NCBI GenBank assembly: GCA_964106645.2
Contig: OZ067047.1
Length of the DNA: 64,000 nucleotides
Reading direction: 5' to 3' (one strand)
Source: Podarcis pityusensis
Taxonomy: Eukaryota
Below, piece after piece: positions 7,899 through 51,214 of the stretch. The stretch's first letter is position 1. Each line of letters starts with the position of its first letter. The notes beneath the pieces are model-generated. The model made no database searches. It had not been told where the DNA came from and saw nothing but the letters and a program-made list of their open reading frames with translations. The translations under genes were made by a program, and so were the position numbers.

Positions 7899-7979
7899 TG
7901 TTTTTATTTTATTTTAATATGGTATGCTTTATCCATCCCGAAATGATACTGCAGTGTTTTTCTGTAGACAAAAATTGTG

Positions 7980-7997
7980 AACTGCTGAACTCAGGGT

Positions 7998-8011
<14 letters not shown>
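7980..8011. repeat. (CA)n microsatellite
   Basis: Read directly. Other microsatellites: (ATT/ATC)n 21710-21757, (GTTT)n 24269-24301, (TATC)n 32929-32997, (TTCC)n 43949-43995. Confidence 0.95.
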
Positions 8012-8034
<23 letters not shown>

Positions 8035-8244
8035 TTTAGGAACAGAACCACCCCCTGCACTACAAGCATAACCATTTAAAACTGACTGATAACATAGAGC
8101 AGCTCTAAAATGTATTATTTGTATAATTCCACTTAAAAAAAGGAAATTATTACTACTACTCCCACAGGCCAAGTCAAGATCTACAACTGTCACACAACTA
8201 GTTCTGCATGTATACAGTGTTGGAGCTTTTGTTTTTCTCTCTCT

Positions 8245-9092: not shown

Positions 9093-9652
9093 TACAAATG
9101 AGCCCCAGGCAGTGTTGCAAACTCAGACATTCTCAACAGCAGTTTTGTGATATGGTGCAGCGATCTGCCATTCAAAGTCAACAACTGCACATGGAACAGA
9201 AACCTTAAATTATTTCTTCAGATGCCTGAATTCCAAAATCTCTGATAAGCAGCTTTTTAAAGACACCGGCATTGCATTTTAATTGTCTGAACAAATCAAG
9301 GTGTTAAGAACATAAGATCTCCGCTGGATCTTATAGGCCAAAGGCCTATTCTAGTCCAGGAACCTGTTCTCACCATGGCCAACCAGATGCCCACAAACAG
9401 AACACATGATTCCCAGCAACTTGGTATTTAGAGGCATGCTGCCTTGCCAGTAGAGGTGCCTGGTGTAACTGCCTATTCATATGCAATGCAATGAGCTCCA
9501 CTGGGATACCAAAACTTTCGTGATCTTATCTGAAACCCGGATTCAAATGGAGCTAAGGAGTTAAAAACCCCATAGGTGTAGCCCATGGGCCTTAGGTTGT
9601 CTACCCCTGGCCAAGATGCTATGCTTAAATATTTAAGCTTTTGCACCGTAAC

Positions 9653-10278
9653 TGTGCTGGGCCCGAGGGTTAACCCAAGCAACACGGTCCAGGTCTGGTC
9701 CCAAATCCAAGGATTCCACAAGGAGTCAGTCCAACAGGGCCAAGGCAGGAAACCAGGCTAGGTCAGGCACAGGGTAACAGGCAGGTTCCAGCAAGCAGCA
9801 ATGTTGCTCCCGCAACCTGGGGTGGGGTCCGGCAGCCTTTTATCTCTGACAGGGTAACGGCCAGTCCTGATCCCCCGGTGACTCACCTCCCTGTCTCGCT
9901 GAAAGGCGGGCACTCTTCCTGCGAGTACTCAGGTCTCTCCTTCTCTCAGACCTGAGTCTCTGCAGCTCGGGGGACGTTGGTGGGTTACTAGACCCAGAGG
10001 CCGCCTCAGCCTCTCCTGACCCAACTGGTAGTGGAGCAGCTGCACGTGATTGCCCAGCAGAGGGAAACGAGGTAATCCCCGCAACTGGAGCCAGGGCAGG
10101 CTCAGGCCACTGACTCGGCTCAGCTGGTGCTTGTTGCAGGGGAACCTGTGCAGACTGGGGCTCTTCAGAATCAGGCCTCAGACTCGGTTCAGATGCCGCC
10201 TGAGGCAAAGGAACCGGTGCGGACCGAGACTCCTCTGGTTCTGAGTCTGAGTCCGAGCCCGAGTCCCAGGCCATCACA
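9653..10278 (-). mobile_element. Solo LTR (probably Gypsy-type) in RASSF3 intron 1
   Basis: TGT...ACA termini; 5-bp TSD G(T/C)AAC; GC-rich; GATAAAAGG TATA-like box on the minus strand near 9840. Confidence 0.75.
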
Positions 10279-11877
10279 GCAACCAACTCCCCAAAGGGCT
10301 ACACGCAATGCAATACCGCACTAAATGTCCATACCAGGAAATCTGACACAATTCTTGGACAAAGATACAATTTCAATTAGTAAAAACACCCATAACTTGG
10401 ACAAGCACACTGGGTTACTTCAATTGTGGGATACCATATTATTAAATGTGAACCTACGCAGTATATAAGGATAGCATGTTGAAATGCTGAAAGCCCAAAT
10501 CCATGTGAAATGGGAGCGTAGCCATTATGACGGCATTCCTACACTCAAGACATAGATAGCCTCTTTTTTTTTTGTCAAATCTGAAAAAATAAACCAGTCT
10601 CAAGCTGCCTTAAATTGAGAATTATCTTTGTTTTAACTTCAGAAGACGAAGAGAAGGAAAGAGGGAGATGCCTCAGGAAATAAAACAGAAGGAAACATGC
10701 CAACCATATGCAGTGCCAACTCTGCAAGTACAACTAAAGTGCTAGCAGATGGGTGGAGAGACTTATATTTGCTGCTTCCTTTGACCTCATTGCCCATGTG
10801 CCCCTCCCCTTCTCCAAAGGGAAAATGCAGGCACGCAAACTGCAGGAGCGAGGCATGCTTGCTTATTTACTAAAAACAAATGAGCCCCTACAACTCCCTG
10901 CCTTCTGTGTACCTTAAGCAATACAAAAACAATTCACTGTATGTACTCAAAACAAGGCGATTATTTTTTTCATGAAACTAACAATCCACAACTTAAGTTT
11001 GCTGCTGCTGCTGGCCTGGGTAGGCGAGGAGCTAAGAGCCTATTTTGACTCAAATGTCTTTTCACTTGGCAACATGCTCAGAATGATTCAATGTGCGCTG
11101 CTGCCACTGTTCACCCTAGATGCCCCCTGCCAATCCCCCTTCAACAGATTTTGCACTGGTGTGTTGAACATGACCTATTATGTGACTGGCTCACTAGGTA
11201 TGGATCAAGTAGCCATACTCCTGATCGGGTGAGAACAAACCAAGTCTTTAATTATAAACGCTAGTTACCAAACCAATGCAAAGGTGTGTGCTTTTGTAAG
11301 CAGCTTTCAAATCTAATGAGGGCATAGATGACATACTTTGGGTTGCTTCACAAATACACAAGTGCCAATCCAGAGTTCAGCCCTGGATCAATCAGACTTC
11401 TACACTTTACACATTTCTGCTTTCTTTCTCCCCTTGCACACACTTTAAAAAAACAAAAACCCATGGAAAGCCCTTTGCCATTACACCCAAACCCACAAGC
11501 TGTGGTTTCCACAATCCCCTCCAAGCTGAAATCAAACTGTGGTTTCGAGGGGATGCACAATTCACAGCTTGTTGATTTGTATGCGAGACGACCTATGATT
11601 TCTATGAAAGCAAAAGTAGCTAACTGAAACAGAGACTACAACAGGAAGGAGAGGCAATATACAAGCAATTCCAACCATAGTACTGACCTTTACCAGGAAA
11701 CTCATCAGCTTTCTAAATGAGAAATCAATAGAAAAAACTTTAATGTCGACAAAAAACTCCACTCCAGATTTTCAGGAACTGAACCTCAAATGCAAGGTAA
11801 CAGGTTTCCCAGTACCCTGCAGCATTATTTCAGAAATGCAGCAACGCTCAAATATTTGTTCTAGAATCAGTGTTAGG

Positions 11878-12001
11878 AAATAGTGTGGTTTAGAGGTTAA
11901 AATGTTGGGCCAGGACCTGGAAAGCCAGGTTTCAAAACCCCACCCAGCCATGAAGCGACTGGGTGAACTTGATGACCAGTTACTGTCACTTAGGCCTAAC
12001 C

Positions 12002-12002
<1 letters not shown>
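11878..12002 (+). mobile_element. Squam3/MIR-like SINE fragment
   Basis: tRNA-like head plus ctgggtga.cttg..ccagt core; related copies at about 28636-28815 (+), 43998-44152 (+) and 60170-60315 (-). Confidence 0.65.
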
Positions 12003-12047
<45 letters not shown>

Positions 12048-12160
12048 TTATTATTTATACCCTGCCCATCTGGCTGGGTTTCCCCAGCCACTCTGGGCGG
12101 CCCCCAACTGAATATTAAAAACACAATACAGCATTAAACATTTAAAAACTTCCCAAAACA
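12003..12160 (-). mobile_element. L2 3' tip with (TAA)n tail
   Basis: Reverse complement of the 3' end seen at 56620-56735. Confidence 0.75.
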
Positions 12161-12242
12161 AAAAAGAGGGGTTATAAAAGTAATGAGGAAGCAGACGGTT
12201 CCACTGGTCTCAACATATTTAAGGAGAAGTATTATGCTCATA

Positions 12243-12593
12243 AGGGATGTGGGTGGCTCTGTGGTCTAAACCACAGAGCCTAGGGCTTGCCGATCAGAAG
12301 GTAGGCGGTTCGAATCCCCGTGACGGGGTGAGCTCCCGTTGCTCAGTCCCAGCTCCTGCCAACCTAGCAGTTTGAAAAGCACGTCAAAGTGCAAGTAGAT
12401 AAATAGGTACCACTCAGCGGGAAGATAAACGGCGTTTCCGTGCACTGCTCTGGTTCGCCAGAAGCGGCTTAGTCATGCTGGCCACATGACCGGGAAGCTG
12501 TACACCGGCTCCCTCAGCCAATAAAGCGAGACGAGCGCCGCAACCCCAGAGTCGGCCACGACCGGACCTAATGGTCAGGGGTTCCTTTACCTT
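12243..12593 (+). mobile_element. Sauria SINE
   Basis: Full length; TSD TATTATGCTCAT. Confidence 0.93.
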
Positions 12594-15570
12594 TATTATG
12601 CTCATGAATTCTAAGTTAATCAGTTTATTAGACCCCAGTTCCTGACCACATGAACAATCTGTGCCAAATACTAACTGTAGGGCTTAATAGATATTTATAA
12701 ACCAGTTTTGCAAGAGCTCAGAGCACTTCCAATATGGTACCACACTAAAGATAGGACACTAATCTCTTTATCACTCAGGTCAGGCACCAAAGAAAGTATA
12801 GAGTATCAGCATAGCTCACTCTGAAAAGCTCACTGTCATTTTGGTGGCCTAGGTCTTTTAGATTCTAAATGCTACATATGGGTTTAATCTGTTTTATAGT
12901 ACAGTATTTTCTGTTCCTAGTATTTCACATTGTTTTATGTGGTCTTCAAGTTTATTCTTGTTATTGTTTTTACTTTTTCTGCCAAATTAGACACTCAAGA
13001 AAGGCTTCTAACCTGAGAAGTATAATATACAGAAACCAAAATCCTCAGCTTTGAAGATTTTATAACGAACCACACAAAACTAAAGGCCACTGTACTTTCT
13101 CTGCATGACTAGTGGAGTATCAACATGTTTTAGTCAAAGTGGGAGTTCCAGCGATTGACACACAACTCTCTCCCACAGATGCATCAAATGCCAAGTTTAA
13201 AGGAATAGGAAAAGATCAGCTTAGTCCACAATTCTTAAAAAGAGAAATAATCTTCGGTAAAATCCACTTTGTCCCTCTCATATTTCTATTTGTTTCACCA
13301 GAATTCTGTGTTGCTAGTTCACAAAGCTTACACACCCATAGACTCCTTGTTCTTCCGCTGTGTCTCTGCCCCTGATCTTTCTTTCCTCCAACTTGGGCAC
13401 CCTCAACAACACCTGTTGTCCTCTTCGGTGATTCTACCCATTGCAGCCCAAAAGTTTGTCTTATGCCTGGAGCTTCCTCCAAGCAAACCTGCTTGGTGCT
13501 ACTTTTTTCTTCCAAATCACAGCTCACAGCCTGCTCTTGTCTTCAAAACCTTTGCCGTAATTCTTTAGTCCTCATCCCCAGCAGAAATGAACCCCATATT
13601 TGCAATTGCTAGCATTCATCCTCAGCTATTCTTCCTCTTTGCTTTTTCTACACTGCATTGCTTTGTTACCCTTGCTTCTTCCTATCAACCTCTTAACTTT
13701 CTTTCTGCCCTAGGGTAAATTCAGAATGTGAGCTGCTTCGGAGGATGGACCACTCTTGCTTATGTTACTCTATAGAACACTATGTACACTCAGGACACAT
13801 ACCACTTAAATGCAGTGTGTTGCTCATACTCCTTATCTGCCTATTCCTGCCCACTTTTTAATCACTGACTGTGTTTCTGAATCAGTGCCAGGAGTGGAGG
13901 CTGAACACTGCCCTGTTGACATCATTAAGGACTGCTGCAACATGTTGCCTGCAGCCATCTCCTAGCAACTATTAAGAGTCTCTAAATATTGAAAACCACT
14001 TGGGAATAGCCAAAGCCAATCTACATATTGAAATGACAAGGTTATCCTTACCTTAGGATGTATAAAGTCCAGGAATTAATACTAGCTGAATTCTTAACCG
14101 CTGCTGTCACCCTGATCCTCTCTGAAACTGCTGTTTCAAAACTTTTAACACAAAGTTTGGAAGAACCTTATTCCATTATCATTCCACTATGCAAAAGCTC
14201 TGGCACCCTGAGAGTCAGATGGCAACCCTGCAATTCTAACAAGATCACAGCCAACTCAGCTTAGTTTAACAGCTTTAAGAAATTAATAGCAAAATATTAA
14301 TGTCTACAGTATTAACAGAATATCAAAGCATCTAGAATACCACATTGTCGCCACTGCATTTTAAATCATGACATGCATTCTTGAAATTATTTTGAGAAGG
14401 AGAAAAAAATAACCTGCACATGATGACCCTAAAAAGAACCCTAGAGTTTATGGTGTCCAAAATTAAATGCAAAACTGCCTTATGAGAAGCACTTGCTCAT
14501 GCAGGTGATCCACACAACTGGATGTGTGTTTTTAAAAATGTACTATTTTTCCAACACGTTTAGAATAGTGTGCTAGCATCATATTTGTAAAACACTCCAT
14601 GCATGGAGTTTGGGGTAAAAGTCTTTTAAATGCTTTGGTTACTTGAAGGCCTTTTGCATGCCAATTCCCATTTAAATACAACTACCTGGGTCAGGTGCAT
14701 ATGGTGTTACAGAAATAAAGTGCAGCAATTTAAAAAACTATTTGTACAGTACTTTCTAACTATTAAAAATCCCTGGATATTGAAAACCACTTAGGAGCAG
14801 ACACAGACAACCTCCACATCATTATGAAGGGAAGATTATATCCCAATTAAGGCTCCGTTAGTGTGTTAAAAACAATTCAAATGATTATGATTGCCGGGTT
14901 GGGCTGAGAAGACGAGGCAAAAAATCCGTTACCTCCCAGGGAACTATAGGTTTTTTTCTATTTATGCGCTTTCCCAGAAATCCTACAACGGTTTGCACGA
15001 GAGCGGCGGCTGCAAGACCATGCGGTTTCAGGAATAACGCATGAGCAATCAGACTTCTCTTTTCCCCGGTCGCATCATGGGAGATCATTTTTTCCGCCGG
15101 GAGAAGTTCTGGCTCACGAGGAAGTGAATCTACTGAGAAAGCCCGCTTTTCATGCTCAAAGGTCGCAGCAACGCTGCTCGAGCTAGCCCAACGGCTGGAA
15201 TCCACACGTGCAGTTCCACCGAAAGTCTGGCGCGGGGGTGCGAAGAGAAACCTTGGGGATCCAGCCCCCCACCCCAATGCTTCTGCTTGCCTGGACTCTG
15301 CTCCCTCTGCGATCATCCGGAAGTGGCACCCGGCACCCTCCAGATCCCGCTGGGACTTGGGGACGGAACCGGGAAAGCGCCACGAGGGGCTCCCCAGAAA
15401 CTTAGGACTTAGTTTGGCGTGGGGCGCGGGGACAGAGAGCGAGCCTGGGAAGAACACGTGGGGTTGCAGCGGAAGGCGCGGCCTGCTGCGGGTCAGGCCA
15501 GGGCAAAGGCGCTCTTGCTCGGGACGGGGAGGATTCCCGCCCGGCGAAAGGAGGGGGGGGGCTCGCTTAC

Positions 15571-15681
15571 TTGCAGACTCGGCTTGGCTTTGGCGGGGCA
15601 GCTCCTGAAGAAGGAGGTGCGGGCGGTGAAGAAGAACTCCTCCGACTCGGACTCTTCCCAGCTGCTGTAGCCGCTGCTCAT
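15571..15681 (-). CDS. RASSF3: RASSF3 canonical first coding exon
   Basis: MSSGYSSWEESESEEFFFTARTSFFRSCPAKAKPSLQ matches the RASSF3 N-terminus (SSGYSS / FFTARTSFFR); 111 bp, phase-0 gtaagc donor; lies downstream of TBK1 on the same strand. I did not find exon 2 in the window. Confidence 0.95.
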
Positions 15682-15685
15682 GCTG

Positions 15686-15757
15686 CTAGTTCCCGTGGCG
15701 CGCCCTCCGTGCAGCAGCAGCAGCAGGGGGGCCCGGGCGTCCCTGCCGCCACCGCAT
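15686..15757 (-). promoter_or_regulatory. Candidate upstream ORF (23 aa) in the RASSF3 5' leader
   Basis: ATG...TAG encoding MRWRQGRPGPPAAAAARRARHGN; stop lies 4 nt before the main ATG; requires a TSS upstream of 15757. Confidence 0.45.
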
Positions 15758-16348
15758 GGAGACCCACCCGGCCGGAGCTCGGCGGCGGACAAGTCCCGTG
15801 GTCGCTGCGCGCCGCAGCCTGGCCGGCGGCGCACTGAGGCCGGCTCTCCTCTCGGACGCGCTTCCGCGGAGGCAGCGCCGCCTCCCGCCCGGCCAGCCAG
15901 CCAGCCAGCTAGCCGGGCCTTCCTCCCTCCTCCTCCCTTCCCCCGAGTGGCCGCGACTGGGCAGCTTCCCTGAGCCGCCACCTGCCTTGAAGCTGGGCGG
16001 GAGCTTCTGGCTCGCCTCCCTTTCCCCTCAGGAACTTGGCTCGCTCGCGCGCGCGCGGGGACTGCGCCCTCTCGCTCCCGCCTTGCAACAGGTGAGCCGG
16101 GAAAGACGAGGCCGCGCTTCTTCCTGCGGAGATCAGTTAGTGCTCCTCCCCAAGCGCCGTTTGGCTCCTGGGCACCTCGCCGCCAAAGTTTCGGCCCAGG
16201 CCGGCTGCATGAGCTAATATCCGTCGGAGATAGCGAGCGTTGATAGGCGCGCATTCTTGCAAAAGCGCTTCAAGGGTTGGCAAACGGCCCTCATTGTCAA
16301 GGGCACCTCCTTAGTTCCAGAAGAGCTCATCTCTTTTAAGAAACAAAA

Positions 16349-16437
16349 TAAAAAAAATCCTTCCAGTTGCTCCTTAGAGACCAACTAAGTTTGTTATTGG
16401 TGTGAGCTTTCGTGTGCATGCATACTTCTTCAGATAC
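16349..16437 (-). mobile_element. Penelope-like element terminal fragment with hammerhead motif
   Basis: GTATCTGAAGAAGTATGCATGCACACGAAAGCTCACACC...TTAGTTGGTCTCTAAGG; near-identical to the copy at 26517-26967. Confidence 0.75.
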
Positions 16438-16814
16438 TCTTTTTTAAGAGAACACGACGGGTGTCACTTAAATCTGGTCCGACGCACCTCTGGTTTTCTG
16501 AATGGCACCAAGCCTTGACAAGTATCAAAAGCTCACAGAAGAATACTGGTGTCAGAGCCTCAAAGGACCACACAGGTGTCAGCAAAGCGGGTGACACCTT
16601 TACATTTTAAAAGGTGATATATCATGGAGCTGGAGCAATCAAGACTGCAATCTCAGGCTCATTTTGGAGTAAGCTCCATGCAGACTTCCAAGTAAACATG
16701 CAAAAAAAAAGAAAGACCAGGCTGCACACTAGGTGCAATTTTAGTACACAAACTGGGAGTAGATGGTGAAAGGCAGATTAGAAATCCCCAAAAAATCAAT
16801 TATAAGTACTCATA

Positions 16815-17088
16815 AAAAAGGTAAAGGGACCCCTGACCATTAGGTCCAGTCGTGGCCGACTCTGGGGTTGCGGCGCTCATCTCGCTTTACTGGCCGAGGG
16901 AGCTGGCATACAGCTTCCGGGTCATGTGGCCAGCGTGACTAAGCCGCTTCTGGCGGACCAGGCAGGAGCAGGGACCGAGCAACGGGAGCTCACCCTGTCG
17001 CGGCGATTCGAACTGCCGACCTGATCAGCAAGTCCTATGCTCTGTGGTTTAACCCACCACCTGCGGTTTAACCCACCACCTGCGTCCC
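16815..17088 (-). mobile_element. Sauria SINE, internally deleted
   Basis: Central part missing relative to the other copies; short tandem duplication in the head; TSD TATAAGTAC(T/C)CATA. Confidence 0.9.
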
Positions 17089-18384
17089 TATAAGTACCCA
17101 TATCCTAATGTAAAAGGCACTATAGTCAACAGAACTAAACAGTGGGGCAGAACAGGTTCAGTCTATGGTATGTGTGTGTGTGTGTGTGCGCGCAAGCAGT
17201 TTTTAAAACCAGGTTATCCCACAAAACGGACAGTTAGTAAAGTTGTGGACATGGGAGTGCCTTATGGGATGGCGGGAAGCAAATTTCTCTTCAGATAAAA
17301 GACAATACTTCTGTAGCTATTTGTTGCCAAGTGGCAGAATCATAATACTCTGATCGTAAGCATGGTTATGCTGAAGTGAATCTGACTCTTTATTGGGTCT
17401 TTTAGTCTAGGTTTCCTGCAGATGAGGAGTTTGCCACCTGTACATTCCCTGGCACATTTTGAACATGGTTAAAAACACAATGCTGAAATAATACAGCAAA
17501 GTAATATAATCTGAGTCTTAAAAAAAAAGACAGCACAAACATGGTAGGCATTTTAAAAATGTTCAGTTATTAATTCCACAAAACCAAAGCAAGTATAAAT
17601 ATGTTCTAAAGTTGAGTTGCAAATAAAGTTCCATAGTCAGTGTTTCCATAACTCTGAATATCTAATTGCATGTTGTCGGGATGAAAAGGAAGGAGAAAGA
17701 ACAAAAACAGTTGTTACATGAACACTGTACTGTCTGGTTTGTAACAACTAATACCATGCTAAGATGCCTGAAGTTATATTGATTTAGTGTCTGTATTTGC
17801 ATTTTTTTAAAGCTACTGGCAAAACACTTAACTGCATCAACAAAGGAATGAGCATATACGAATCAATGCTTTGTGTTAGCTTTCTGCCAAATTTCACAGT
17901 AAAGCAGAGAATATCATCCTCTGTGTCCTCCTAGTACAAGTTATGCATAAGTACTTTTCAGGTGGACAGCATAGCACTTTTTTCTATTCACCACTGAGTT
18001 CCAAAGCATGCTCTTTATAAATTATGAGCCAGGCATGCAAATGAAGGTTGGCCTGCTGGCTGTAAAATTTTAATTGGACTTTGAATTATAGTGTGTGAGA
18101 CAGACAATATGCTTCACAGGGGCCTTATGCTTTGCTTATGGACAACAACCAGAATTGCTACTTGTTATTCCTTGAGCCTCTTGCTCTATAAGACAATGGC
18201 AAAATCACATTACAAAAGAAGAAAAGTAGCTTTCTTACACCCAAAACTGATGGGTCCTTTAGTAAAGTATCAGGAATGTAAATAGCCGTTCATTTGTGCT
18301 ATGAATTCCTTTTGTGAGGATAGGCTCCTTTTTGTAAGGAGGTTTTTAGGAAATGCAAGTCATTTTATTTCAGACCTAGGTTAA

Positions 18385-19159
18385 CTACACAACCTTGATG
18401 GCAGAAAGTGAGGAGGAATTAAAGAACCTTTTATTGAGGGTGAAAGAGGAGAGCGCAAAATATGGTCTGAAGCTCAACATCAAAAAAACGAAGATCATGG
18501 CCACTGGTCCCAGCACCTCCTGGCAAATAGAAGGGGAAGAAATGGAGGCAGTGAGAGATTTTACTTTCTTGGGCTCCATGATCACTGCAGATTGTGACAG
18601 CAGCCAAATTAAGAGACGCCTGCTTCTTGGGAGGAAAGCAATGACCAACCTCGACAGCATCTTAAAAAGTAGAGACATCACCTTGCCAACAAAGGTCCGT
18701 ATAGTAAAAGCTATGGTTTTCCCAGTAGTGATGTATGGAAGTGAGAGCTGGACCATAAAGAAGGCTGATTGCCGAAGAATTGATGCTTTTGAATTATGGT
18801 GCTGGAGGAGACTCTTGAGAGTCCCATGGACTGCAAGAAGATCAAACCTATCCATTCTTAAGGAAACCAGCCCTGAGTGCTCACTGGAAGGACAGATCCT
18901 GAAGCTGAGGCTCCAATACTTTGGCCACCTCATGAGAAGAGAAGACTCCCTGGAAAAGACCCTGATGTTGGGAAAGATGGAGGGCACAAGGAGAAGGGGA
19001 CGACAGAGGACGAGATGGTTGGATAGTGTCTTCGAAGCTACAAACATGAGTCTGACCAAACTGCGGGAGGCAGTGGAAGATAGAAATGCCTGGTGTGCTC
19101 TGGTCCATGGGGTCACGAAGAGTCGGACACGACTAAACGACTAAACAACAACAACAACA
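18385..19159 (+). mobile_element. BovB (RTE clade) LINE, 5'-truncated
   Basis: Open 249-aa frame MAESEEELKNLL...RRIDAFELWCWRRLLRVPWTARRSN...GVTKSRTRLND typical of BovB; (CAA)n tail; TSD AGGTTAA. Confidence 0.95.
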
Positions 19160-21224
19160 AGGTTAATTTTCCACAACTGCAACTCAGGCATACAGTAAAG
19201 CAGCGTTTGAACTAACGGCTACTGCAAAGTTATTTGAAAGGGTAACATGTATTGAATTTTTGACTTCCTCTTGCCTATTTATTTCCAAAGCCTCAAGTTA
19301 AATCTGGGAACTTCCCTTTCTCCCTGTGCACTTACTGAATCATTCCTATCAATTTCTTTGATTTTGTCTTTTTAAATTTTGTCTAAGGTAGTAATCCTAA
19401 CCTGCCCCCCCCCCCCCAATGTTGTTGGCTGGGGAGAGGTAAGATGTAGCGCTGTCTCTCTGCCAATGATGAGAAGCAGACACCCAAACTACTCCCTTGC
19501 AGGTGGGAAACATCACTGCTGGGTCTCCTCTATTGTTTCAGTGGCTTGAGGGTTTGGACCTGTAGGATCCAAAACATGGCTCCTCAGACCCCTCAGCAAT
19601 GCCAAATATGGCTAAAAACTGCCTCTCCACTTTCCTTTCTGATCAAATTTCATATGTGTCGTGGTGACTCAGATGCTCCTGTCTTTCCTTGCCCCAGTTC
19701 TGCCCATCTACTTATAAGTGGACCTGATCAGAACCTTTAGAATCACATTTCATCTTTAGAATAAAGATTCCTGTATGTTTTTACAGATAGCCAATCAAAA
19801 GCCAGTTTTTTCCAATGCACAAAATTAATGAAATGTTGTATCAGAAGACAAATAACATGGCAAAAATGGGAATTTAAAACACACCCTTAGACATCTAGTA
19901 GTGCTCTGTATTTACGGGAGTCCTGATGAATCACTTTGAACTGTAAATGTTTCAAGACGTTTTAGTTAATACTGTGAATGTTTGAGGGAAGGAAGTAGAA
20001 GGATAATTATCCGTCTAGGAAAAATGACTAACCATAGCATCTGGTGTTTTAAGATACAAATCAGCTGGCTTGGCAAGAGTGCAAAATGAGCCAGTGACTT
20101 CCAAAGGTATATGGATTATGTGTGACAATTCTAACAGATAACTGTAAGCAATTATAACAATTTAAATTTGTATTTACTATCGTCAGCATGTAAGCACATT
20201 ATTTTCTACATCTAACATCTCCAGGAACCACATGAAACTGAATACCTTTCTCTTCCTCTCTCTCTTAAACATATACTGTTTAGCATGGACATCACAGGCT
20301 TTAACTTGCAGTAAAATATAAGTTTATTCAAGATAGAATAAACCTTGATGTTGGCAGGTTTCAAAGACCATGAAGGGTAGCAGAATATATGTAGCAGGAT
20401 CTATAACTTAATTGTCAGGTTGAAGAGTTGCAAAGCTGGTGAACAGGGTTGGCTTTGAAGTGTTCACTTTCAAACTGACAGCTATTGTTTAGGTAAATAA
20501 ATGGGAAACAATTTTGAGAGAAGGCAGCAAAGTGGATTCAATCTGACAAAACCAAACTTGCTTAATTTGAGGAACTGCAGTGAATGGAGAAATGGGTGGT
20601 TTCCTCCCATCCACACTGTGCATGAGGCTGTTCTTGAAGAAGACCCAGAACTCTCAACTGTTCCAAAATATGGCAGCCAGAATACTGGCTGGGTTTCCAT
20701 TTAGAACTCACAGAACCCACAGAACTCTGGTTTTATATCTGTAAGCTGAGAGTGTGTGATAGAAGGAATGGCTAAAGTGGTCAAACCAGTCTCTGTTAAG
20801 TTAATGGCCCAAGCCAAGCCTGTTAAGCATCTTTTTTACATGTGTAAAGGTGAAATAAAGGTGTGTTGTCATAAAAGCAACTACCTAGCAATTCTTCCAG
20901 GAGGAGGCAGAAGGTCTCTTCCCCTCCCCTCACCTGGCTGGAAGCCAAGCCACCCTGGAAACAGGGAAACAATAGGCCAAAGCTATGCTTTTGAGGATTC
21001 TCCTAAGAACCTAACAGGAAAGCAAAATCTGTTGGAGTGTTAATGCTGTAAGAAGTCTTTGTATATACGTGTAATTAAGACAATATTTCAAAAAGACACC
21101 ACAGTGCCCAGAGACCTTCACCCCAGAGAAACCAAACCTGACGTAAGCGTTGGACCAGCTGAAGTCTTTCGCCACTCAGAGAATGGAGTGTGTGTAGCAG
21201 TGGGTGGATTTCAACATTGTACTA

Positions 21225-24113: not shown

Positions 24114-26540
24114 CTTCCCTTCACACTGCCAAATTAGGAAAGTAGATTAGAGCAATGAATCTGAATAAATCAATCATATGGTTCAAGATGTTTCATACTG
24201 TGAGAATTCCTGTGAAATGCAAACATTTATGTAGCGAGATGAATGTAAAAATACATAATTATGTAACTTTGTTTGTTTGTTTGTTTGTTTGTTTGTTTGT
24301 TGCATGATTCAAAGTATCTCTAGGAGATTTACTTACACAGTTAAAACAGCCCTCAAGTTTCACAATAATTAATTTTGTTCGTAAAAAGATCATGGCTCTA
24401 ACTTAGAAATATACTGTACACATATGACGGTTAAAGGAAACCTGCTCACTGACTCAAGGTACACTCATAGATGGCTTAGCTCCTAGTCACAGCAGCTGGC
24501 TACCTCAGATAAGCAATGCCCTTCCTCTGTCAGGGGAATCTATCCTAGCAACTGCTGACTCGACCCTGTCTGTTGGTTTGTCCTTGCCTAGAGATAATTC
24601 TTTCAATCATCTACAAACTGGGACCACTTTTGACCTGAGAGACAATCATCAAGTCTTCCCATAGCCTCTGACATCTGTTAGATGAAAATAGATAACCTAA
24701 TTTTATATTCAGCAATCTCTTTGCGTTAAGACAGATAGCAACAGGCCTGAAAAAAGTCTTCCTCTGTGATTGGCACACACAGAAAAGAATGCATGCAGCA
24801 GGAACCTCCCTTCCTATAAAATACTGGTCTGTTCTGTTGGAACCAATCTGACTTAAACATGTCACACATATTTATGTTTAGCTACATACCCTCCAACAAT
24901 CCTCAGACGAAAATAGGGACATTCTATTCTACATTAGTATCACTGCTGCCTCCCCCCTCTTTAAAAAATAATTTTTATTAAAGATTTTCTTGGTTTACAA
25001 AAGTATGTGCATTGTCTCTTTTTTCAGGTTGTAAAGTCTTTTCTACAGATCAGTTACAATTCCTATGAGACGTTAGTGCTGAGCACAATATAAGGATAGG
25101 GAAGAGAAGAGAAGGGAGGGGTGCTGCCCCCCTTTTTAAATATATGGAATTCCTGATGCCCAAGAATACCTAGTGCTTTGCTCTTACTCACTGGGCCATG
25201 GTGAGGAGCTTTTGCATAAAATGGCAGGTCATACATATTTTAATAAATAATAAATTCAATAAAAATAGGCATGTTCGAATGTAAAATCTTTTACATCTTC
25301 CAAAAGAGCTTGTGTTGGCAGAGCACCTTGAGAATGTGCCAAGAGTTTTTCCTCAATTGTTAGTTCTATTCCATGGCAGGAAGAATGGGATTATTTAGTG
25401 GTAAAAAATGCATCCTTCCTTAGCTTCCTTCTTTCCATAGTACAAATCCATAAACCTCTCTATAATAAATTCTATTCTAGTGAACTTTATTTGGTAGTGG
25501 AGTGAACTTAAAGGGGACTTTCCATCTCCTGCCCCACTCACTAATGGCATGTAAAATAAAATAAAAAGACTTGCAGCAATAAAAACACAACTATAATACT
25601 TTGTGGTTTAAATATAGCACCCCAAACGTGGAATCTCAGCATGCCTGCAAGCACCAAGAGAATTCCAGCCTGTTATTGCACTGCAATTGCAATTTGATTC
25701 CCAGCATCTGTCTTGAAACAAGCGACTCGACGTGAAGAGGGAGCCATCAGAAAATCAGACCAGTAAGGTCTCTATGAAAGAGAGAAGCTCCATTCTTTTT
25801 CCTGTTCAAGCTTGCGTGAATGTCAAATAATGTCAGCAAGATTGACTATCACTGCCCCTGCCCAATTTATAATATTGGAATGTAAAATATGTAATTACAA
25901 AAGACTGAGATGTAATGTTTGAAAAAAATATCCACATCAATCCAATGGTGTGGCCATCATCACAGATACCTAAATTGGACCCTCCCCACCCAACTTTCAC
26001 CTCAGAGGCAACTGAAGGACCATCTTTTTCCAAAGAGAGTGGAGAAGAAGCGGTAACAGAGTTTTTTAAATAAACAAATTATGTTTTTCATTCTGTGGTA
26101 ACTTTAAAAAATATATATATGTTTATTGTTCTAATAATCTTAAGTAAACAACTTTTAAAATCCACCAGAAAGTGGTATATAAATATTGTGAATAAGTCAA
26201 TAAACTGATCAGATAATGAATATGTCAACTGTTGGCTGGTTGGAACACATGGCTCAGATTCCTACTTTACTCCCATAAAAGGATGAGGGGCAGAGAACAA
26301 AAAGGCTGAAAAGATAGCCATCAAATGGAAAATCAATACAAGCAAAGAGCATCTTCAAAAGAGAAAGCTTCAAGAGCCAAGTGCGGAAAAAGAATCAGAT
26401 TGTAATCCTCCTTTCAAGTGCTTATTTTCAGCAGGGATGTATGTGTCTGTGTGAGAACCTCAGCAGGCAAAACGAAATACTCTGAAGGTGTTTCTCAGCT
26501 CACATTTGTCAACATTAAAAATTTGTCCAGTAGCACCTTA

Positions 26541-26967: not shown

Positions 26968-28064
26968 CTTTGCCAACATTGTTATCCAGTATTTTCCCCA
27001 AACTTGGTCATGGATGCACTCCATTCGAACTGCACATTTGAAGTGTGTTGAACAGCTAAGAAGAAAATGGAAATGTACTGTAAATACAGGGCAGATATGC
27101 TATACTGGAAACTGAAGCAGCTGGCTAAATACGCCTACAAGTCTTACAGTGAATTTACCTTTTCTGATAAAATCAAACATGTCAGTTTCATGCTGCAAGG
27201 GGTAACTACTTGGCAAGTGATGAAAATAAAAAGCAGGCATTTATTAAGGAGCATGGAGCTGGCACAGCAAAAAAAAAAAGTGGATTTACAGTACTGCCTC
27301 TCCACCTTCTGCTGTGTCAGGTGCAAGTGTCAGGGCTGTGGATGTGATGGCTGGAACAAAACCGCTCACTGCTCCTCAGGCACAATATGGTTGTTCTCTT
27401 AGGTGGTACTTCTGTGCATGCCTCTGGGAGGAAATACAACTGGTCACACTAGGAAATGTCACAGATCTGCTACTATCTTTATAATTTTATATAGCCTCAC
27501 TGTTTACATTTCGCCGTGTGCGTGTGCACGCATATAACACTTGTCAAATGGATAAATTGAGTTCTAGACCAGAAATACGTCCACCACAATAATCCATTCA
27601 CCCTGAAGGTGCCACAAAACCCTTTGCTGCCATTACTACTACAGACTGATACAACTACAGTACTGTACCCTTCTGGAATATATTAACTAATAGCCACTCT
27701 CTGTGTTTCAACATGCAGCACATGTTCTAAAAAGAGGAAGGAAACTCTTAGATGTGGAGGCTTTTAATTGTTTTGAGTGCAGATGGTTTGGATCAGACCA
27801 AATCAACAAAGCTCAAGGTCAATGCCTGTAGCTTGAGAAGCATGTAAGTTAAGCTTGTTTATACTCTCTTCTGGGCTATCCTTTTCACCCATATATTACT
27901 CCATTAACTTTGCAGAGGCTTGTCACAATCACAGCAGGTAGAACGCAAACTGTGCACTGCCAAAGCTACTTTGTTTTGAACTTCTGCTTCAGGATCTCTT
28001 CTGCTCCTTACCATACAGTTGAAATAACCAAATTTAATGTCCGTGGGCCACATTCAGTTACCCT

Positions 28065-31485: not shown

Positions 31486-32054
31486 TATTTACTCAGCAGC
31501 AATATTCAGTGGGGCTTACTCTCAGGGAAGTGGACATAGGATTGCAGATTTATCTACATACTGGACGGGACACACGTGGCTGTAGCTGGAGAGATTTTCT
31601 ATCTATTTTTGAAACGCAGTACAGTAGTTAAGATTCTAGCAAGAACTGCAGACGTGTTAAGGGAAATGCAAGTGCAACACAGAGTGGGGAATTATCAGGA
31701 AACGTTCCTTTTGCACAAGCTGCTGTAACCTAACCTATTAGACTCTTTCCATAAAATGCTGACAATGGGATGGGCAGATGCCAACAATTCTTAAGGCCTC
31801 AATGGGGCATGGAAAGCCAAGCTCAACTTTCTCCAAATCGTCCAGGCCAGCTGTCAGCAAACCCATCCTTCTGGGTATGGAAAGGAAAGCAAGATCTGCT
31901 TTCAGAATGCTGGCTGTCAGCATGAGAGGAAAGCATCCATCTCCAAATTCTGGCTACAATAGATGTTTCGCTTAAGAGATGACATTTTTATTACCTATTA
32001 AAGCATTTATATCCTGATTTTCAGTCCAGGGACCCTCATAGCAACTTAAAGATA

Positions 32055-35853: not shown

Positions 35854-35963
35854 CTGCCCATCATCAGTGTCATATACGGAGCCGCATTCCATCAGTTTTC
35901 CATTCTGCGTATAGTCCAGATGTACCAAGTCTTGACAGTGAGAACGGCATGTGTATTTGCAAT
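35854..35963 (-). CDS. RASSF3: Putative upstream RASSF3 exon encoding the degenerate second half of a C1 domain
   Basis: tttcag|AT TGC AAA TAC ACA TGC CGT ... GGG CAG|gtaatg; (D)CKYTCRSHCQDLVHLDYTQNGKLMECGSVYDTDDGQ resembles RASSF1A CKFTCHYRCRALVCLDC and RASSF5 CKFTCHPECRSLIQLDC; phase 1->0, as in those paralogous exons. Confidence 0.8.
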
Positions 35964-38996: not shown

Positions 38997-39063
38997 CTGC
39001 TCTCTGCTTTTTCTTCACCTCAAGCTTGATTTTGCTGGATAGTTTGTATATGGCTGTTCCCAT
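38997..39063 (-). CDS. RASSF3: Candidate alternative first coding exon of a long RASSF3 isoform
   Basis: GTG ATG G Kozak context; MGTAIYKLSSKIKLEVKKKQRA plus 1 nt; CAG|gtaggt donor; phase 1 fits the 35963 exon. Confidence 0.6.
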
Positions 39064-44152: not shown

Positions 44153-44302
44153 NNNNNNNNNNNNNNNNNNNNNNNNNNNNNNNNNNNNNNNNNNNNNNNN
44201 NNNNNNNNNNNNNNNNNNNNNNNNNNNNNNNNNNNNNNNNNNNNNNNNNNNNNNNNNNNNNNNNNNNNNNNNNNNNNNNNNNNNNNNNNNNNNNNNNNNN
44301 NN
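44153..44302. other. Assembly gap (150 N)
   Basis: Run of N; true length unknown. Confidence 1.
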
Positions 44303-44960: not shown

Positions 44961-45081
44961 CAGAAGATGTGCAAAGAAGCTTGATTTTTCTCCTCCTTGG
45001 GCTACCCAGTGATTTGGGGAACCAATAAAAAAACTGTGCTATCCTTCTAATTGTTTTGTTGAAGTCGTTTCTTATTGCCAT
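44961..45081 (-). CDS. RASSF3: Candidate distal first coding exon of a long RASSF3 isoform
   Basis: GCT ATG G Kozak context; MAIRNDFNKTIRRIAQFFYWFPKSLGSPRRRKIKLLCTSS plus 1 nt; consensus G|gtaagt donor; phase 1; a further in-frame ATG at 45165. Confidence 0.55.
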
Positions 45082-47086
45082 AGCTAAAGTCAGCCGACTG
45101 CTCTTGAGGTAACTGCACAGAAGTGCAGGAAGGAAGGAAAAAGCCTCAAATACCCACAACCCCATAAGATCGCCGTGAATAGAACCTCAGCCAGCATGTC
45201 TCAAGGCCACCTGTTGGTCCTAAATCCTCTCATCTACATTTAGTAAACTAGAGATCTCTATCTTTATATTCAGTCACATTACTATAACCAAACTGTATGG
45301 TGGTACAGTGAGAGGAATTCATCAGTATCTTTACAAAAATGCTGTTTAAAAAACCATTTCCTGTAGTATTTTTCTCAGGTTATATATGATCCCAACATTA
45401 AACAGGTGTTTTCCTTACAGAAATCCGTTAATCAAATCAACAGAGCATTCTTCCCACAATCTTATGAAGTGGGTGATGAATTATAAAGATACCTTGATAT
45501 TGTTACTATTTAGAATGAGGTGCTCTGTTACTAACATGTTTATTTGAAAATAAATCCTTTTCTGATTCTAAACTGTACTGCCAGGATCTATGCTAAAGTT
45601 TCCAATATGCAGTCTTAGGCTCAGTCTCTAACAAATCACTTTTGCTGACACTGAAATCCAACAAATGAATAAAATATATACAGTAGTGGCTTACTTTTGG
45701 CACCTCAAAATGAAAGTCTATAAATAAATGACATGCTTTTATATATAGATAAGAATGATGAATCTGTGCAACCGTGATGCTTATATTTTCATTGTGCTTT
45801 TAGATAATTACACTATTCTCATTAAACAAAACAGTGTCCAATTGAAAAGGATGCCCATATTTTTTACATTTGCTGCTGTTTAGAGTTTATTGCCTCCAGC
45901 TATCTCGTTTAAGTTGACATTTTCTTGGCTAAATCCAGACACAACAGCACACAAAACGTTATAGGAACAAAGATGTTGCATCAAAATTGTAAAATGACTT
46001 AAAAGCATTTGTGTAACACAGTGCATAGTACTGATGTTTCAGGAGATATTTATGTTTCACTCCTCCATACTAAAACATGTAAGATATTTAGACCCCCACT
46101 TTCAGATATTTTTAACTTACTGCCTTTTTCCAGTCTGAATCTTGATAGATTGTATTTCCTGCGTCAATGTGTCCTAGAAGATAAAGCAAACATTTCCACA
46201 GATATTCTTTTGTCTGTGTCTGTTTGAATATAAGAGACAGATATCCAACAGAAAAACTGTTTCCTAGTTTTCACTATATTGCATGGAAGCCAGAAGGAAT
46301 GTCGGAGCAAAGTATTTTAATGCAACTGGGAAGCCAAGGACCACTGAAAACATAATAAAAGTTAGGGTGTTTTGTATCTCAACAGCTAGATTGTTTATTA
46401 AACTCATAAACTTCTTAGAATCCCATCATGATTTAAGATGCTGAGTATGTCCCATAATACCCTGAGTGATGTATCTTCATGTGTTGTTTATTCAATTAAG
46501 ATTTTAATTCTTGGCTAGATCCATACTCTACACACTGTGAAAGCAGGATAATAGACTTGATGGGTCTTTAGTCTTATCTAGAAAAGGTGTCTTCTTATAT
46601 TTTAAATTCATTATTTTAAATTAAAAATGAAATGTACACCTTTTTTAAAAATACTTTTTCAGTGATAACTTAAAACACTGGCTATCCCTTTGTTTCTTTG
46701 CAGAATATTGGAAACACAAAGGACTGGAATTTCTATGATGGAATTGGAGAGTTTAAAAATGTAGGATGTGGCAACGTTCAGGCGAACTTGTTCCCAAGAC
46801 TTGTTAGGGACAAACGCTAGTTTCAGTCATATTGTAGCTGCGAGACTAAGATAAAGAACAAGTATCAGAAAATGGAATGCAGTTTGGTTGTTTTATTTTC
46901 TAGGTCACTTCTGTGTTTTCTTCACTCCTCACTTTCCTCTGTGGCCCTCTAGTCTTGTGCCATGCTCCCCCCATTTAAGTGATTTTCACCTGTGGAATAT
47001 CCTGGGCCCCCCCAGGGAGCCACGTGGCCCTCAGTTGAGAAACGCTGCCCTACCAGATGCATGGTTTTATTATTTGTGGTGACCTA

Positions 47087-47429
47087 AGTGGGTGGCGCTG
47101 TGGGTTAAACCATAGAGCCTAGGGCTTGCTGATCAGAAGGTCGGCAGTTTGAATCCCTGTGACAGGGTGAGCTCCCGTTGCTCGGTCCCTGCTCCTGCCA
47201 ACCTAGCAGTTCGAAAGCACATCAAAGTGCAAGTAAATAGGTTACGCTCTGGCAGGAAGGTAAACGGCGTTTCCATGCGCTGCTTTGGTTCGCCAGAAGC
47301 GGCTTAGTCATGCTGGCCACATGACCCGGAAGCTGTACGCCAGCTCCCTCGGCCAATAAAGCGAGATGAGCGCTGCAACCCCAGTGTCGTCCGCGACTGG
47401 ACCTAACGGTCAGGGGTCCATTTACCTTT
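47087..47429 (+). mobile_element. Sauria SINE
   Basis: Similar to the other copies. Confidence 0.9.
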
Positions 47430-47959
47430 AAGCCATATTTTGGTGTGGGGCCCCGCTTACATTGAAATTTCCGCCTTCATATTTGACCATTGTTGGTAAG
47501 CACAGGAATGCCTGACTGGGCCTTGCACCCAAAGAAAGCCCTAGACTGTATGGGATCTCATGCAATCCTGTAGAGGACACTCTCCTGAACACGAGTGCAT
47601 GATATGTGGTGGTACAAAGCAATATTGGAGTGGGCAACCCCAGTTCCACCCACCCCCATATTTTGGCTATTGCTGATCTGCATAAATGTGTTTCATAGTG
47701 CCATGTGCCAGCTCTAGGCCAGGTGAGATTTCAATGGCATCTTGTAGAGGACATTTTCATGGTTGTATCGGTGTATGATTTGTGGTGGAAATAGCCATAT
47801 TTTGCAGTGGCCACCTTCAGTTACCTGTTTTTTTTAAAAAATGGTTGCATGATGTAATCACATATTTATGAGCATTTCACAAGCATGTTGTTGACTGAAG
47901 AAAATTACCGTTGGGCTCAAAGGAGTGTGTCCTCTGATCATGGAGATATATATCATGTA

Positions 47960-48315
47960 AAAGGTAAAGGTAAAGGGACTCCTGACCATTAGGTCCAGTC
48001 GCGGACGACTCTGGGGTTGCGGCGCTCATCTCGCTTTATTGGTCGAGGGAGCCGGCATACAGCTTCCAGGTCATGTGGCCAGCATGACTAAGCCGCTTCT
48101 GGCGAACCAGAGCAGCGCACGGAAACGTCGTTTACCTTCACGCCAGAGCGGTACCTATTTATCTACTTGCACTTTGACGTGCTTTCAAACTGCTAGGTGG
48201 GCAGGAGCAGGGACCGAGCAGCGGGAGCTCACGCGTCGCAGAAATTTGAACCGCTGACCTTCTGATCAGCAAGCCCCAGGCTCTGTGGTTTAGACCACAG
48301 GGCCACCTGCATCCC
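47960..48315 (-). mobile_element. Sauria SINE
   Basis: TSD TATATATCATGTA. Confidence 0.93.
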
Positions 48316-51032
48316 TATATATCATGTAGGGTATCCCAAATATTATTTTGCAATTCAGAGACATACTTTACTTCGGAGTTCAGAACATATTAACTTTTCT
48401 TCTTTTTTCAGTGTTTCAAACTTTCAACCAAATAAGGAACTGGGAACTAGCAACCAACTTCAGCGTCCTGCTCATACCTTGTTGTTTTTTTAATTATTTC
48501 TTTCAACCCATTATCTTTCACACACTCTTAACAATGTTCTATAACACTGTGAGTATCCAGTCTTGAAGTCCAATGATGTACATTGCTTACGTACCAAGAT
48601 CAGCAATTCCTCATATCAAGGACAATGAATTAGAAGTGTGAAAAGAGATTTATTTCTCATGCTGCTGCCTAACTTGTGGTACATTGATTTGAAGAGAATT
48701 TTCGCAAGACCCACAGCCGCTGCCGATAGAGTTACTATACAGACTAAGAATGGTAGAGTTCCCTCTACAAATTAATATGAAAGCACAATGCAAAATATTG
48801 AACACTACAAAAAAGCAAGCTGGTATATGTCATATTGTTTACAACTTATCTTAATAATTTACATGGAGGAAGGGGGAACAGGACCTTTTTTCTCTTGAGT
48901 GCTGCGTACCCTGTAATGTAATCTGTTGGGGGCTGTAAGCAGGGGCAGAGACAAAAGCAATGTAGATTAATCCAGAATAGACTGTACTGCTTCAATTTTC
49001 ACCATGGCTACCACGGATTAGAATTCTCAGTCCTATAAAGGTGTCCTCAGAAATAAGCCCCTCTGGGTTATTTGGGGTTATTTTTTATTTTAGTATAGGA
49101 GACTAATATAGGTAATTTGAAAAGCAAGTAAAAGTAATTCCTTTCTTATTTTAGTGTGCCATATGCACATAAACATATACGATAGAAAGCTATCAATTTG
49201 TTCTTGGGCAGCTGAGAGAACCCCCCCCCAAAAAAAAAGCCCAGAAGAAAAGCTTAAAAAAAGTATTTTAATCAAATAAAACACTGCCCCTCACCGTTAT
49301 TCTGAAACTTCATAGAAAGACAGCAAAATCCTTTAAAATAAAATAAAATGAAACTAATAGAAAGGAAGGAACTCTGAAGGGATGGGAGAATGTGGCAGAA
49401 GTGCCTTCAGCAACATAAAAGCTGTCATCCATGATTTACACTATTTGTTTAAAACTGGTTTCAGTATATGGAAGAAAAATCGACCCTTCTCCAATTCCTC
49501 CCTTCAAAAATTATGTTATAGAGTAAACAGGATTATGCAAAATGATGATTCTGTAAAACAGAAAACGATAGCATAAAGTAAACACGTTACAGAAATATAA
49601 TCTCAACATTTCAGAATAGACATTTACATACAATAAGGCAGCAAAGTTTCACATAGATTTACTACCTATGATTTCCGTAGTCCTTCCAACTAGGTTATTG
49701 GAAACTTGGTAATGAAAATAAGAGCTGCAACAGTGAAATAATATTTCTTTATCCATTTGAGACTATGTAGAGACGGGTGATTTTTATTTGTATTTTGGCA
49801 TGTCAGAATGGAGGAGACAGAAGGTAGAGTTGATTAGAAATTTGATTAAAAGAAACGAAGGCCTCAACCCACAGAAATCTAGAATAGTCTCAGATCAATT
49901 GGGTCTCTCCTAGAACTTATCCAGAATACTCTGGCTTAGAACAACAGCCTTACTTTCTAGACACGTTGGAAAATAAGTTCCACTAAAGTCAGTAAGACTG
50001 AATTAGACTGGTTTTGTATGTGTGCATGTCTGTTGAATTAAAAAAATTTAAAACACAGTGTAAGGAAGGTAGCAGAAGCTCACTTCTCTACTACCTCCTC
50101 CCCATGATAGCTTATCAAATGCTGAACTAAATTTTGGGCCTCTGTGCTGAATGAGGTTGATGAGCTGTAAGGAAGATTCCCCAAAACTGGGCCAAGGCAC
50201 TTTCAGTGAGTGAGGAAAGTGCCAACTCTTCAGGGATCCCCTTTTCCAAGGCAACTGCGTAAACACCTGTGCCAATGTTTTACCTCAGTGTCAAACGCTT
50301 CACAATAGCTTTAATAAAAAAAGGAAAGAATTCTCCTACTTTAGTAGAACTGACAAAGATTAGAAACCAGTATATGGGCCACACCAGGCTCAATGTTTAG
50401 CATGTAAGAAAGTAAATGCTACTTTTGAAATTGTATGGTGTTTGGTTTTTTTTTTAAATGCCAGTAAGAATTAATAACAAGGTTCACTGATTTTGAGACA
50501 CACTCTATGCTAGCGAACATGTTACAGCTTTTCCGTCACCTGTTGATTTAGCAAATAGAAGATTCAATTTGTATGTGCTTTTAAATCCCAAACTGGCAGA
50601 TTATACATACTCAAACTGAACATGATTACAAACTCAAAAATATTTCCTTCACCATTAGTTAAGAGAGATACTTTTTCAAGAGGTAATCATACTTTTCCCT
50701 GTCTCTTTTTTTGTACTTTGTAAGAGACATCTGCTCACAATGAAAGACAGCAGGAAACAATTTCAGAGGATCATAAATGAGGTACTGTGCATTCAGGTGA
50801 CTTAAGGGGAAGCCCAATTTCCTTGACAAAAATGAAGTAGGGTTTTTCCAAGACCAGTTTCTCTAGCAACATTCACAAGTAAACAGGCAAGGACAGCATT
50901 TGAAGCAATTGCATTGTGTCGATGTGCTCATCACAATATGCAGCCGTCATTATTTCACACGGAGGAAAGTTCTGATGTTACTCCAAATGTTAAGACCACT
51001 TGTAACGTTACCAAAAGAAATATACTTTCTAT

Positions 51033-51162: not shown

Positions 51163-51214
51163 CTAAATACAATCCACATTCCTTGGGCCACCATCCATCG
51201 TCAAAGCACCAAAC
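51163..51214 (-). CDS. TBK1: TBK1 last coding exon with stop codon
   Basis: FGALTMDGGPRNVDCI-TAG; tttag acceptor; 52 coding bp. Confidence 0.96.

What the first reader, a model, noticed from the sequence alone, without database searches (positions are those of the whole stretch)
35854..35963. Hidden RASSF3 exon encoding half of a C1 domain: a RASSF1A/NORE1A-like long isoform
Seen: a 110-bp minus-strand segment with tttcag acceptor and CAG|gtaatg donor, open in phase 1->0, encoding (D)CKYTCRSHCQDLVHLDYTQNGKLMECGSVYDTDDGQ, 20 kb upstream of the canonical RASSF3 first exon. Known: RASSF1 and RASSF5 each have a long C1-bearing isoform (RASSF1A, NORE1A) from a distal promoter and a short isoform (RASSF1C, NORE1B/RAPL) from a proximal one. 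Their second exon starts in phase 1 with CKFTCH..C..L..LDC and ends in phase 0. RASSF3 is normally described as lacking C1, and its canonical exon 1 here also ends in phase 0. Inference: this is the RASSF3 paralogue of that exon; it would splice in frame to the shared exon 2, skipping 15681-15571, so the gene starts within about 6 kb of the TBK1 stop and the interval is not intergenic. Novelty caveat: I recall poorly characterised 5'-extended human RASSF3 transcript models, which I could not check.
Basis: partly seen in the sequence, partly recalled or inferred. Interest (0 to 1): 0.9.

Follow-up and report, generated by a model that had tools for sequence, protein, structure and literature searches.

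The report
RASSF3 exon orphaned from C1 partner
This is a real, ancient exon of the tumour-suppressor-family gene RASSF3 that completes a zinc-binding C1 domain in sharks, frogs, turtles, birds and some lizards; this wall lizard has deleted the other half of the domain, so the exon now links two short conserved positively charged leader peptides to the core protein.

Summary
The exon (35963-35854, minus, phase 1 to 0) is real but not hidden: RefSeq already models it in Podarcis muralis and P. raffonei, spliced to the shared RASSF3 exons. It corresponds to RASSF1A/NORE1A exon 2 and is conserved from sharks to mammals. Full C1-bearing RASSF3 models exist in shark, sturgeon, frogs, turtles, birds, Sceloporus and Rhineura, against the literature I found. 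This lizard cannot make that isoform: the first exon with the other four zinc ligands is deleted with about 11 kb (same in gapless P. raffonei), and two of the exon's four ligands are changed (H>R, C>Y). Two other conserved phase-1 first exons remain: MAIR (45081-44961, dN/dS about 0.1, 6.1 kb from the TBK1 stop) and MGTA (39063-38997). Best reading: alternative promoters give RASSF3 interchangeable N-termini; here the exon is an in-frame linker for basic, probably membrane-targeting leaders (inferred). The C1 first exon is also lost in Anolis sagrei and broken in Candoia. The scan noted a similar first-exon battery on another piece of this genome (s1-722527, unchecked).

The parts
35854..35963 (-). 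Internal coding exon, counterpart of RASSF1A exon 2-alpha-beta; second half of a C1 domain; ligand positions C,H,C,C read C,R,C,Y here; phase 1 to 0
44961..45081 (-). Coding part of alternative first exon 'MAIR' (40 codons + 1 base, donor G|gtaagt, phase 1); net charge +9, amphipathic helix in residues about 2-21; 5' end not determined
   Evidence: used in RefSeq models of P. muralis and P. raffonei
38997..39063 (-). Coding part of alternative first exon 'MGTA' (22 codons + 1 base, donor G|gtaggt, phase 1); Gly2 plus polybasic stretch, net +6
   Evidence: modelled in gar, salamander, Sceloporus, pig, marmot, fruit bat; identical in P. raffonei
15571..15681 (-). Canonical short-isoform first exon (RASSF1C/NORE1B type), phase 0, in CpG island about 14750-16500
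46505..48554 (.). Junction interval of the deletion that removed the C1 first exon (1-alpha) and about 11 kb relative to Sceloporus; holds two repeat copies (47957-48316, 47074-47430)
51163..51214 (-). Last coding exon and stop of TBK1 (upstream neighbour, synteny marker)

Best explanation
RASSF3 ancestrally has the RASSF1/RASSF5 two-promoter plan plus extra first exons. Three upstream first exons, all ending in phase 1 (1-alpha with the first half of C1, MAIR, MGTA), splice to this exon, which joins the shared RA-SARAH exons in phase 0 and skips the proximal short-form exon (shown from genomic anatomy and database models). In Podarcis exon 1-alpha was deleted (shown). Both zinc sites of a C1 domain take two ligands from each exon (established C1 structure, own knowledge), so no C1 fold can form, and the remaining ligands are drifting (C>Y in all three Podarcis sequences, H>R here). 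The exon persists as an in-frame linker that attaches the MAIR leader (basic amphipathic helix) or the MGTA leader (Gly2 plus polybasic, possibly myristoylated) to the GTPase- and MST1/2-binding core. Most likely function: direct membrane or organelle targeting of RASSF3 without the C1-RA autoinhibition described for NORE1A (inferred, about 0.5 on its own).
For: Exon order and identical splice phases in gull, Sceloporus, Rhineura, Candoia, Elgaria, P. raffonei, window. RefSeq models join MAIR, this exon and shared exon 2 in two Podarcis species. A 1-alpha profile scores 82, 73 and 36 bits in Rhineura, Sceloporus and Candoia and at most 7 bits in the window. Sceloporus 6,809-18,267 has no counterpart in the window, and gapless P. 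raffonei is colinear at 95-97%. MAIR dN/dS 0.06-0.13 for window against other taxa, MGTA 0.13-0.41, this exon 0.35-0.52. Ligands invariant in every 1-alpha-bearing model; changed only in Podarcis, Candoia and therian mammals. MAIR hydrophobic moment 0.57-0.63 in 8 taxa from newt to cat, shuffle p 0.044. NORE1A C1 occludes its RA domain (PMC3337673); short RASSF3 is cytosolic unless recruited by MIRO (PMC11316025).
Against: Window versus P. raffonei shows 4 amino-acid-changing and 0 silent differences in the exon, 3.6%, like intron background of 1.7-4.3%, which fits either a relaxed linker or early decay. Anolis sagrei lacks 1-alpha but keeps all four ligands, so ligand loss is not strictly coupled. 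MGTA has Tyr at position 6, off the usual myristoylation consensus, and its helix moment is not above shuffles (p 0.17). Structure predictions were uninformative (pLDDT 38 and 45).
Confidence: 0.72

Rival explanations
1. One reading: this lizard makes a C1-bearing RASSF1A/NORE1A-like RASSF3 isoform.
For: Such isoforms are modelled in shark, sturgeon, frogs, turtles, birds, Sceloporus and Rhineura; Rhineura's matches Nore1 C1 at E 4e-14.
Against: Exon 1-alpha is absent between TBK1 and MAIR, where it lies in the other species; that interval has no gap; P. raffonei agrees. Two ligands are changed. The 150-N gap lies downstream of MAIR, not where 1-alpha sits.
Confidence: 0.03
2. The exon is turning into a pseudoexon in this species after loss of 1-alpha and is no longer used.
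For: Divergence from P. raffonei equals intron background and is all amino-acid changing; two ligands lost.
Against: Frame, length and both splice sites are intact and identical to P. raffonei. MAIR and MGTA end in phase 1 and need this exon to reach the phase-0 shared exon in frame, and they stay under purifying selection.
Confidence: 0.1
3. The transcripts exist but work like RASSF1B: upstream exons are mostly leaders and translation starts at the Met inside this exon or later, giving a nearly core-only protein.
For: Models starting at that internal Met exist for Pogona and birds (230-231 aa); RASSF1B uses a different 5' exon with exon 2-alpha-beta and encodes only RA and SARAH (PMC2586335).
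Against: MAIR and MGTA reading frames are conserved at protein level from fish or amphibians to mammals, with low dN/dS and a G at +4 of both ATGs.
Confidence: 0.1
4. The upstream exons form a separate small gene or truncated product ('RASSF5-like' models) that ends before the RA domain.
For: Rhineura, gull and alligator models end shortly after this exon.
Against: Many models in other species run through to RA and SARAH with C-termini identical to the short isoform; the short models look like split annotation at the same TBK1-RASSF3 locus.
Confidence: 0.05

Closest known systems
RASSF1A (exon 1-alpha + 2-alpha-beta) and RASSF5/NORE1A long isoforms
   Same: Split C1 domain with the intron before the fifth ligand, phase 1 to 0 second exon, distal CpG promoter, short isoform from a proximal promoter; true for RASSF3 of shark, frogs, turtles, birds, Sceloporus, Rhineura.
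   Different: In this lizard the C1 first exon is deleted and ligands are changed; RASSF3 has two further coding first exons (MAIR, MGTA) not described for RASSF1 or RASSF5 in the review read (PMC2586335).
RASSF1B (exon 1-beta + 2-alpha-beta)
   Same: An alternative first exon splices onto the half-C1 exon.
   Different: RASSF1B encodes only RA and SARAH; MAIR and MGTA are conserved coding exons.
RefSeq/Ensembl automated RASSF3 isoform models (XP_028601627 P. muralis X2, XP_053261039 P. raffonei X1, XP_042324379/81 Sceloporus)
   Same: Same exon and same junctions; the exon is already annotated.
   Different: Predictions without description; the window allele has a further ligand change (H>R); the loss pattern of 1-alpha is not noted there.
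Canonical RASSF3 (238-255 aa, RASSF1C/NORE1B-like)
   Same: Shares RA and SARAH exons.
   Different: Literature states its N-terminus has no similarity to RASSF1A or NORE1A (PMC2586335); the long forms do.

Membership tests
RASSF1A/NORE1A-type C1-bearing long isoform (this genome) | Distal first exon encoding C1 ligands 1-4, in a CpG island | tested here: not met
   No tblastn or profile hit, deletion against Sceloporus and Rhineura, same in P. raffonei; met in Rhineura, Sceloporus, gull
RASSF1A/NORE1A-type C1-bearing long isoform (this genome) | Second exon, phase 1 to 0, homologous to the C1 second half | tested here: met
RASSF1A/NORE1A-type C1-bearing long isoform (this genome) | All zinc ligands intact, Pfam C1_1 at gathering score | tested here: not met
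   C,R,C,Y in the window; no C1_1 hit on the P. muralis model; Rhineura 26.9, Sceloporus 27.0, falcon 32.2 bits pass the 26.5 cut-off
RASSF1A/NORE1A-type C1-bearing long isoform (this genome) | In-frame join to shared RA and SARAH exons, skipping the proximal first exon | tested here: met
   Phases match in P. raffonei locus; database models share 213-214 identical C-terminal residues with the short form; not shown by reads
RASSF1A/NORE1A-type C1-bearing long isoform (this genome) | Transcript and protein expressed | not testable with these tools
RASSF3 orthologue | TBK1 - RASSF3 - sulfatase (GNS-type) synteny and short-form first exon | tested here: met
N-myristoylated plus polybasic membrane anchor (MGTA leader) | Gly2, small residue at position 6, basic cluster | tested here: inconclusive
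   Gly2 invariant and net +5 to +6, but Tyr at position 6 in gar and tetrapods, Cys in two teleosts
Amphipathic lipid-binding or organelle-targeting helix (MAIR leader) | High hydrophobic moment with positive charge, conserved | tested here: inconclusive
   Moment 0.57-0.63, net +7 to +11 in 8 taxa, shuffle p 0.044; binding or import not tested

The most novel reading that the evidence does not exclude
RASSF3 carries a 400-million-year-old set of interchangeable N-terminal modules (full C1, amphipathic MAIR, lipid-anchor MGTA, short form) that send one RA-SARAH Hippo adaptor to different membranes; the C1 module was lost repeatedly (Podarcis, Anolis sagrei, Candoia, probably therian mammals) while MAIR and MGTA were kept, so mammals have two unstudied membrane-targeted RASSF3 isoforms and all functional work so far used only the cytosolic one.
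Probability: 0.4. Interest if true: 0.62.

Novelty: new variant of a known kind. Interest (0 to 1): 0.45.

Why it matters
It corrects the usual statement that RASSF3 has only a RASSF1C-like form: the C1-bearing architecture appears ancestral to RASSF1, 3 and 5. It points to two conserved coding first exons, present also in non-human mammal models, that may set where RASSF3 couples small GTPases (MIRO, REM, RASD) to MST1/2. It also gives a replicated natural case of a split domain decaying after one exon is lost. The exon itself is already in automated annotation, which limits the novelty.

Tried and rejected
Pfam scan of the 36-aa peptide: nothing at E up to 10. Motif scan for a C1 first half in the window: none. 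AlphaFold models of the MAIR-type and C1-type alignments: pLDDT 38 and 45, not used, no fold search run. Third homologue search returned only 7 proteins and did not widen squamate sampling. Turtle locus too long to fetch; Elgaria 1-alpha status unknown because the locus stops 10 kb upstream of MAIR. Assembly drop-out of a GC-rich exon: rejected by the colinear gapless P. raffonei assembly. Exon 1-alpha hidden in the N gap 44153-44302: rejected by exon order; the gap was not filled or looked up. Strict coupling of 1-alpha loss and ligand loss: rejected by Anolis sagrei.

Full report
Observation. The canonical first exon is at 15681-15571, phase 0, in a CpG island. The motif occurs once in the window against about 6e-6 by chance. 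The peptide alone finds no Pfam family, but its two best PDB hits are the Nore1 C1 structures, and the alignment shows His replaced by Arg and the last Cys by Tyr. The TBK1 stop is at 51165-51163, 15.2 kb away. Shared exon 2 is beyond the window.

Organism. The canonical exon matches Podarcis muralis RASSF3 fully, and the window is 95-97% identical to P. raffonei. The exon differs from both species' models, so the window is a Podarcis that I did not identify further.

The exon is already annotated. RefSeq P. muralis isoform X2 and P. raffonei X1 begin with a first exon whose coding part is at window 45081-44961 (MAIR), continue through this exon and join shared exon 2, skipping the canonical first exon. 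Long and short models of one species share 207-215 identical C-terminal residues in seven of eight pairs. The TBK1 - RASSF3 - sulfatase order identifies the loci as RASSF3.

Four N-termini. Across jawed vertebrates the models fall into four types. (1) Full C1, in shark, sturgeon, paddlefish, frogs, turtles, birds, Sceloporus and Rhineura; Rhineura, Sceloporus and falcon pass the Pfam C1_1 cut-off and Rhineura matches Nore1 C1 at E 4e-14. (2) MAIR, in amphibians, squamates, birds, a marsupial and placental mammals, with a similar leader in a teleost. (3) MGTA, in gar, teleosts, amphibians, alligator, Sceloporus, pig, marmot and fruit bat; the window copy is 39063-38997. (4) The short form. In gull and Sceloporus the order is TBK1, 1-alpha, MAIR, MGTA, this exon, short-form exon; Rhineura and Candoia agree over the parts fetched. 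All three upstream exons end in phase 1 with GT donors.

Loss of the C1 first exon. A profile of 1-alpha finds it in Rhineura, Sceloporus and Candoia but not in the window, P. raffonei or Anolis sagrei. Sceloporus 6,809-18,267 has no counterpart in the window; the flanks map to 48554 and about 46500-46370, with two repeat copies between. P. raffonei is gapless and colinear, so this is a real deletion. Anolis sagrei has its own deletion. Candoia keeps the exon with an in-frame stop at codon 43 and a ligand change. No mammalian model seen carries C1, but I could not fetch a mammalian locus, so loss there is not shown.

Ligands and selection. The four ligands in this exon are invariant wherever 1-alpha is intact. 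They are changed in Podarcis (C>Y; H>R in the window only), Candoia (H>D), a marsupial (first C>G) and placental mammals (C>G and C>Y). Anolis keeps all four, so the coupling is loose. Pairwise dN/dS for the exon is 0.18-0.38 among other squamates and 0.35-0.52 for the window; MAIR gives 0.06-0.13 and MGTA 0.13-0.41 for the window. These are short sequences and no significance test was made. Against P. raffonei the exon has four differences, all amino-acid changing (3.6%, introns 1.7-4.3%, other coding exons 0-1.9%), with frame and splice sites unchanged.

Mechanism. Shown: anatomy, phases, conservation, deletion, ligand changes. From established C1 structure (own knowledge): each zinc site takes two ligands from each exon, so half a domain cannot complete either site. 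Inferred: MAIR and MGTA need this exon to reach the phase-0 shared exon in frame, which explains why it is kept while its residues drift. Inferred, about even odds: MAIR (net +9, helix moment 0.58, shuffle p 0.044) and MGTA (Gly2, net +6, but Tyr6) target the protein to membranes. Short RASSF3 is cytosolic until MIRO recruits it to mitochondria (PMC11316025), and in NORE1A the C1 domain occludes the RA domain (PMC3337673), so C1-less leaders would give a localised adaptor without that brake.

Known and new. The review PMC2586335 says the RASSF3 N-terminus has no similarity to RASSF1A or NORE1A and describes RASSF1B as an alternative 5' exon on exon 2-alpha-beta. RASSF1, 3 and 5 form one subgroup (10.1101/2020.02.05.923433). 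Six searches found no description of the long RASSF3 forms, within an open-access library only. The exon is known to annotation pipelines; the four-module plan and the repeated loss of 1-alpha seem undescribed. This lizard's isoform is not a member of the C1-bearing class, although it uses the same promoter and splicing plan.

Limits and rules followed. The N gap was not filled or looked up. The window's spliced model was searched exon by exon by reference; the joined search was left out, and only database proteins were aligned or folded whole. One human entry appeared (P0178); I did not read, compare or search it. Primate entries and unnamed mammal-like proteins (P0205, P0207, P0210, displayed before their origin was considered, and unnamed Logan entries) were left out of the comparisons of this exon. 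A Naja model that fuses the exon to a retroviral gag-like frame was not pursued. Structure models were too poor to use.

Verdict. Real exon, real long RASSF3 isoforms, already in automated annotation; no C1 domain in this lizard; interest 0.45.

Noticed in passing
L007:1195-10001 (Anolis sagrei): Independent deletion of RASSF3 exon 1-alpha in a gapless interval, with all four ligands of the downstream exon still intact.
   Followed up: partly
L004:3188-3515 (Candoia aspera): Exon 1-alpha is retained in a CpG island with its donor but has an in-frame stop at codon 43 and a Cys>Arg ligand change.
   Followed up: partly
L002:10001-33316 and L003:10001-64866: RefSeq 'RASSF5-like' genes in Rhineura and gulls are the 5' exons of RASSF3 annotated as a separate gene.
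   Followed up: partly
window 35878-35872: An in-frame GT 86 nt into the exon (weak context) could act as a cryptic phase-0 donor shortening the linker by 8 codons; not present in P. raffonei.
   Followed up: no
window 15682-16254: The frame upstream of the canonical first exon stays open for 191 codons through the CpG island; P. muralis RefSeq X1 (428 aa) uses it, probably an over-extended model.
   Followed up: no
window 45082-45165: An in-frame upstream ATG extends MAIR by 28 codons in the P. raffonei model; other species start at MAIR, some mammal models carry a different 15-residue extension.
   Followed up: no
P0200/P0217 (Naja naja): A gene model fuses this exon to a retroviral gag p30-like frame; left alone.
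   Followed up: no
window 27699-27991, 31627-31942, 25210-25759, 19820-20073: Non-coding blocks between the exon and the canonical promoter conserved with Elgaria; 27699-27823 and 25598-25725 also with gull; candidate enhancers.
   Followed up: no
window 18395-19144: Fragment that reads like a retrotransposon reverse-transcriptase C-terminus (RTE/BovB-like, from memory); several SINE-like repeats elsewhere in the window.
   Followed up: no
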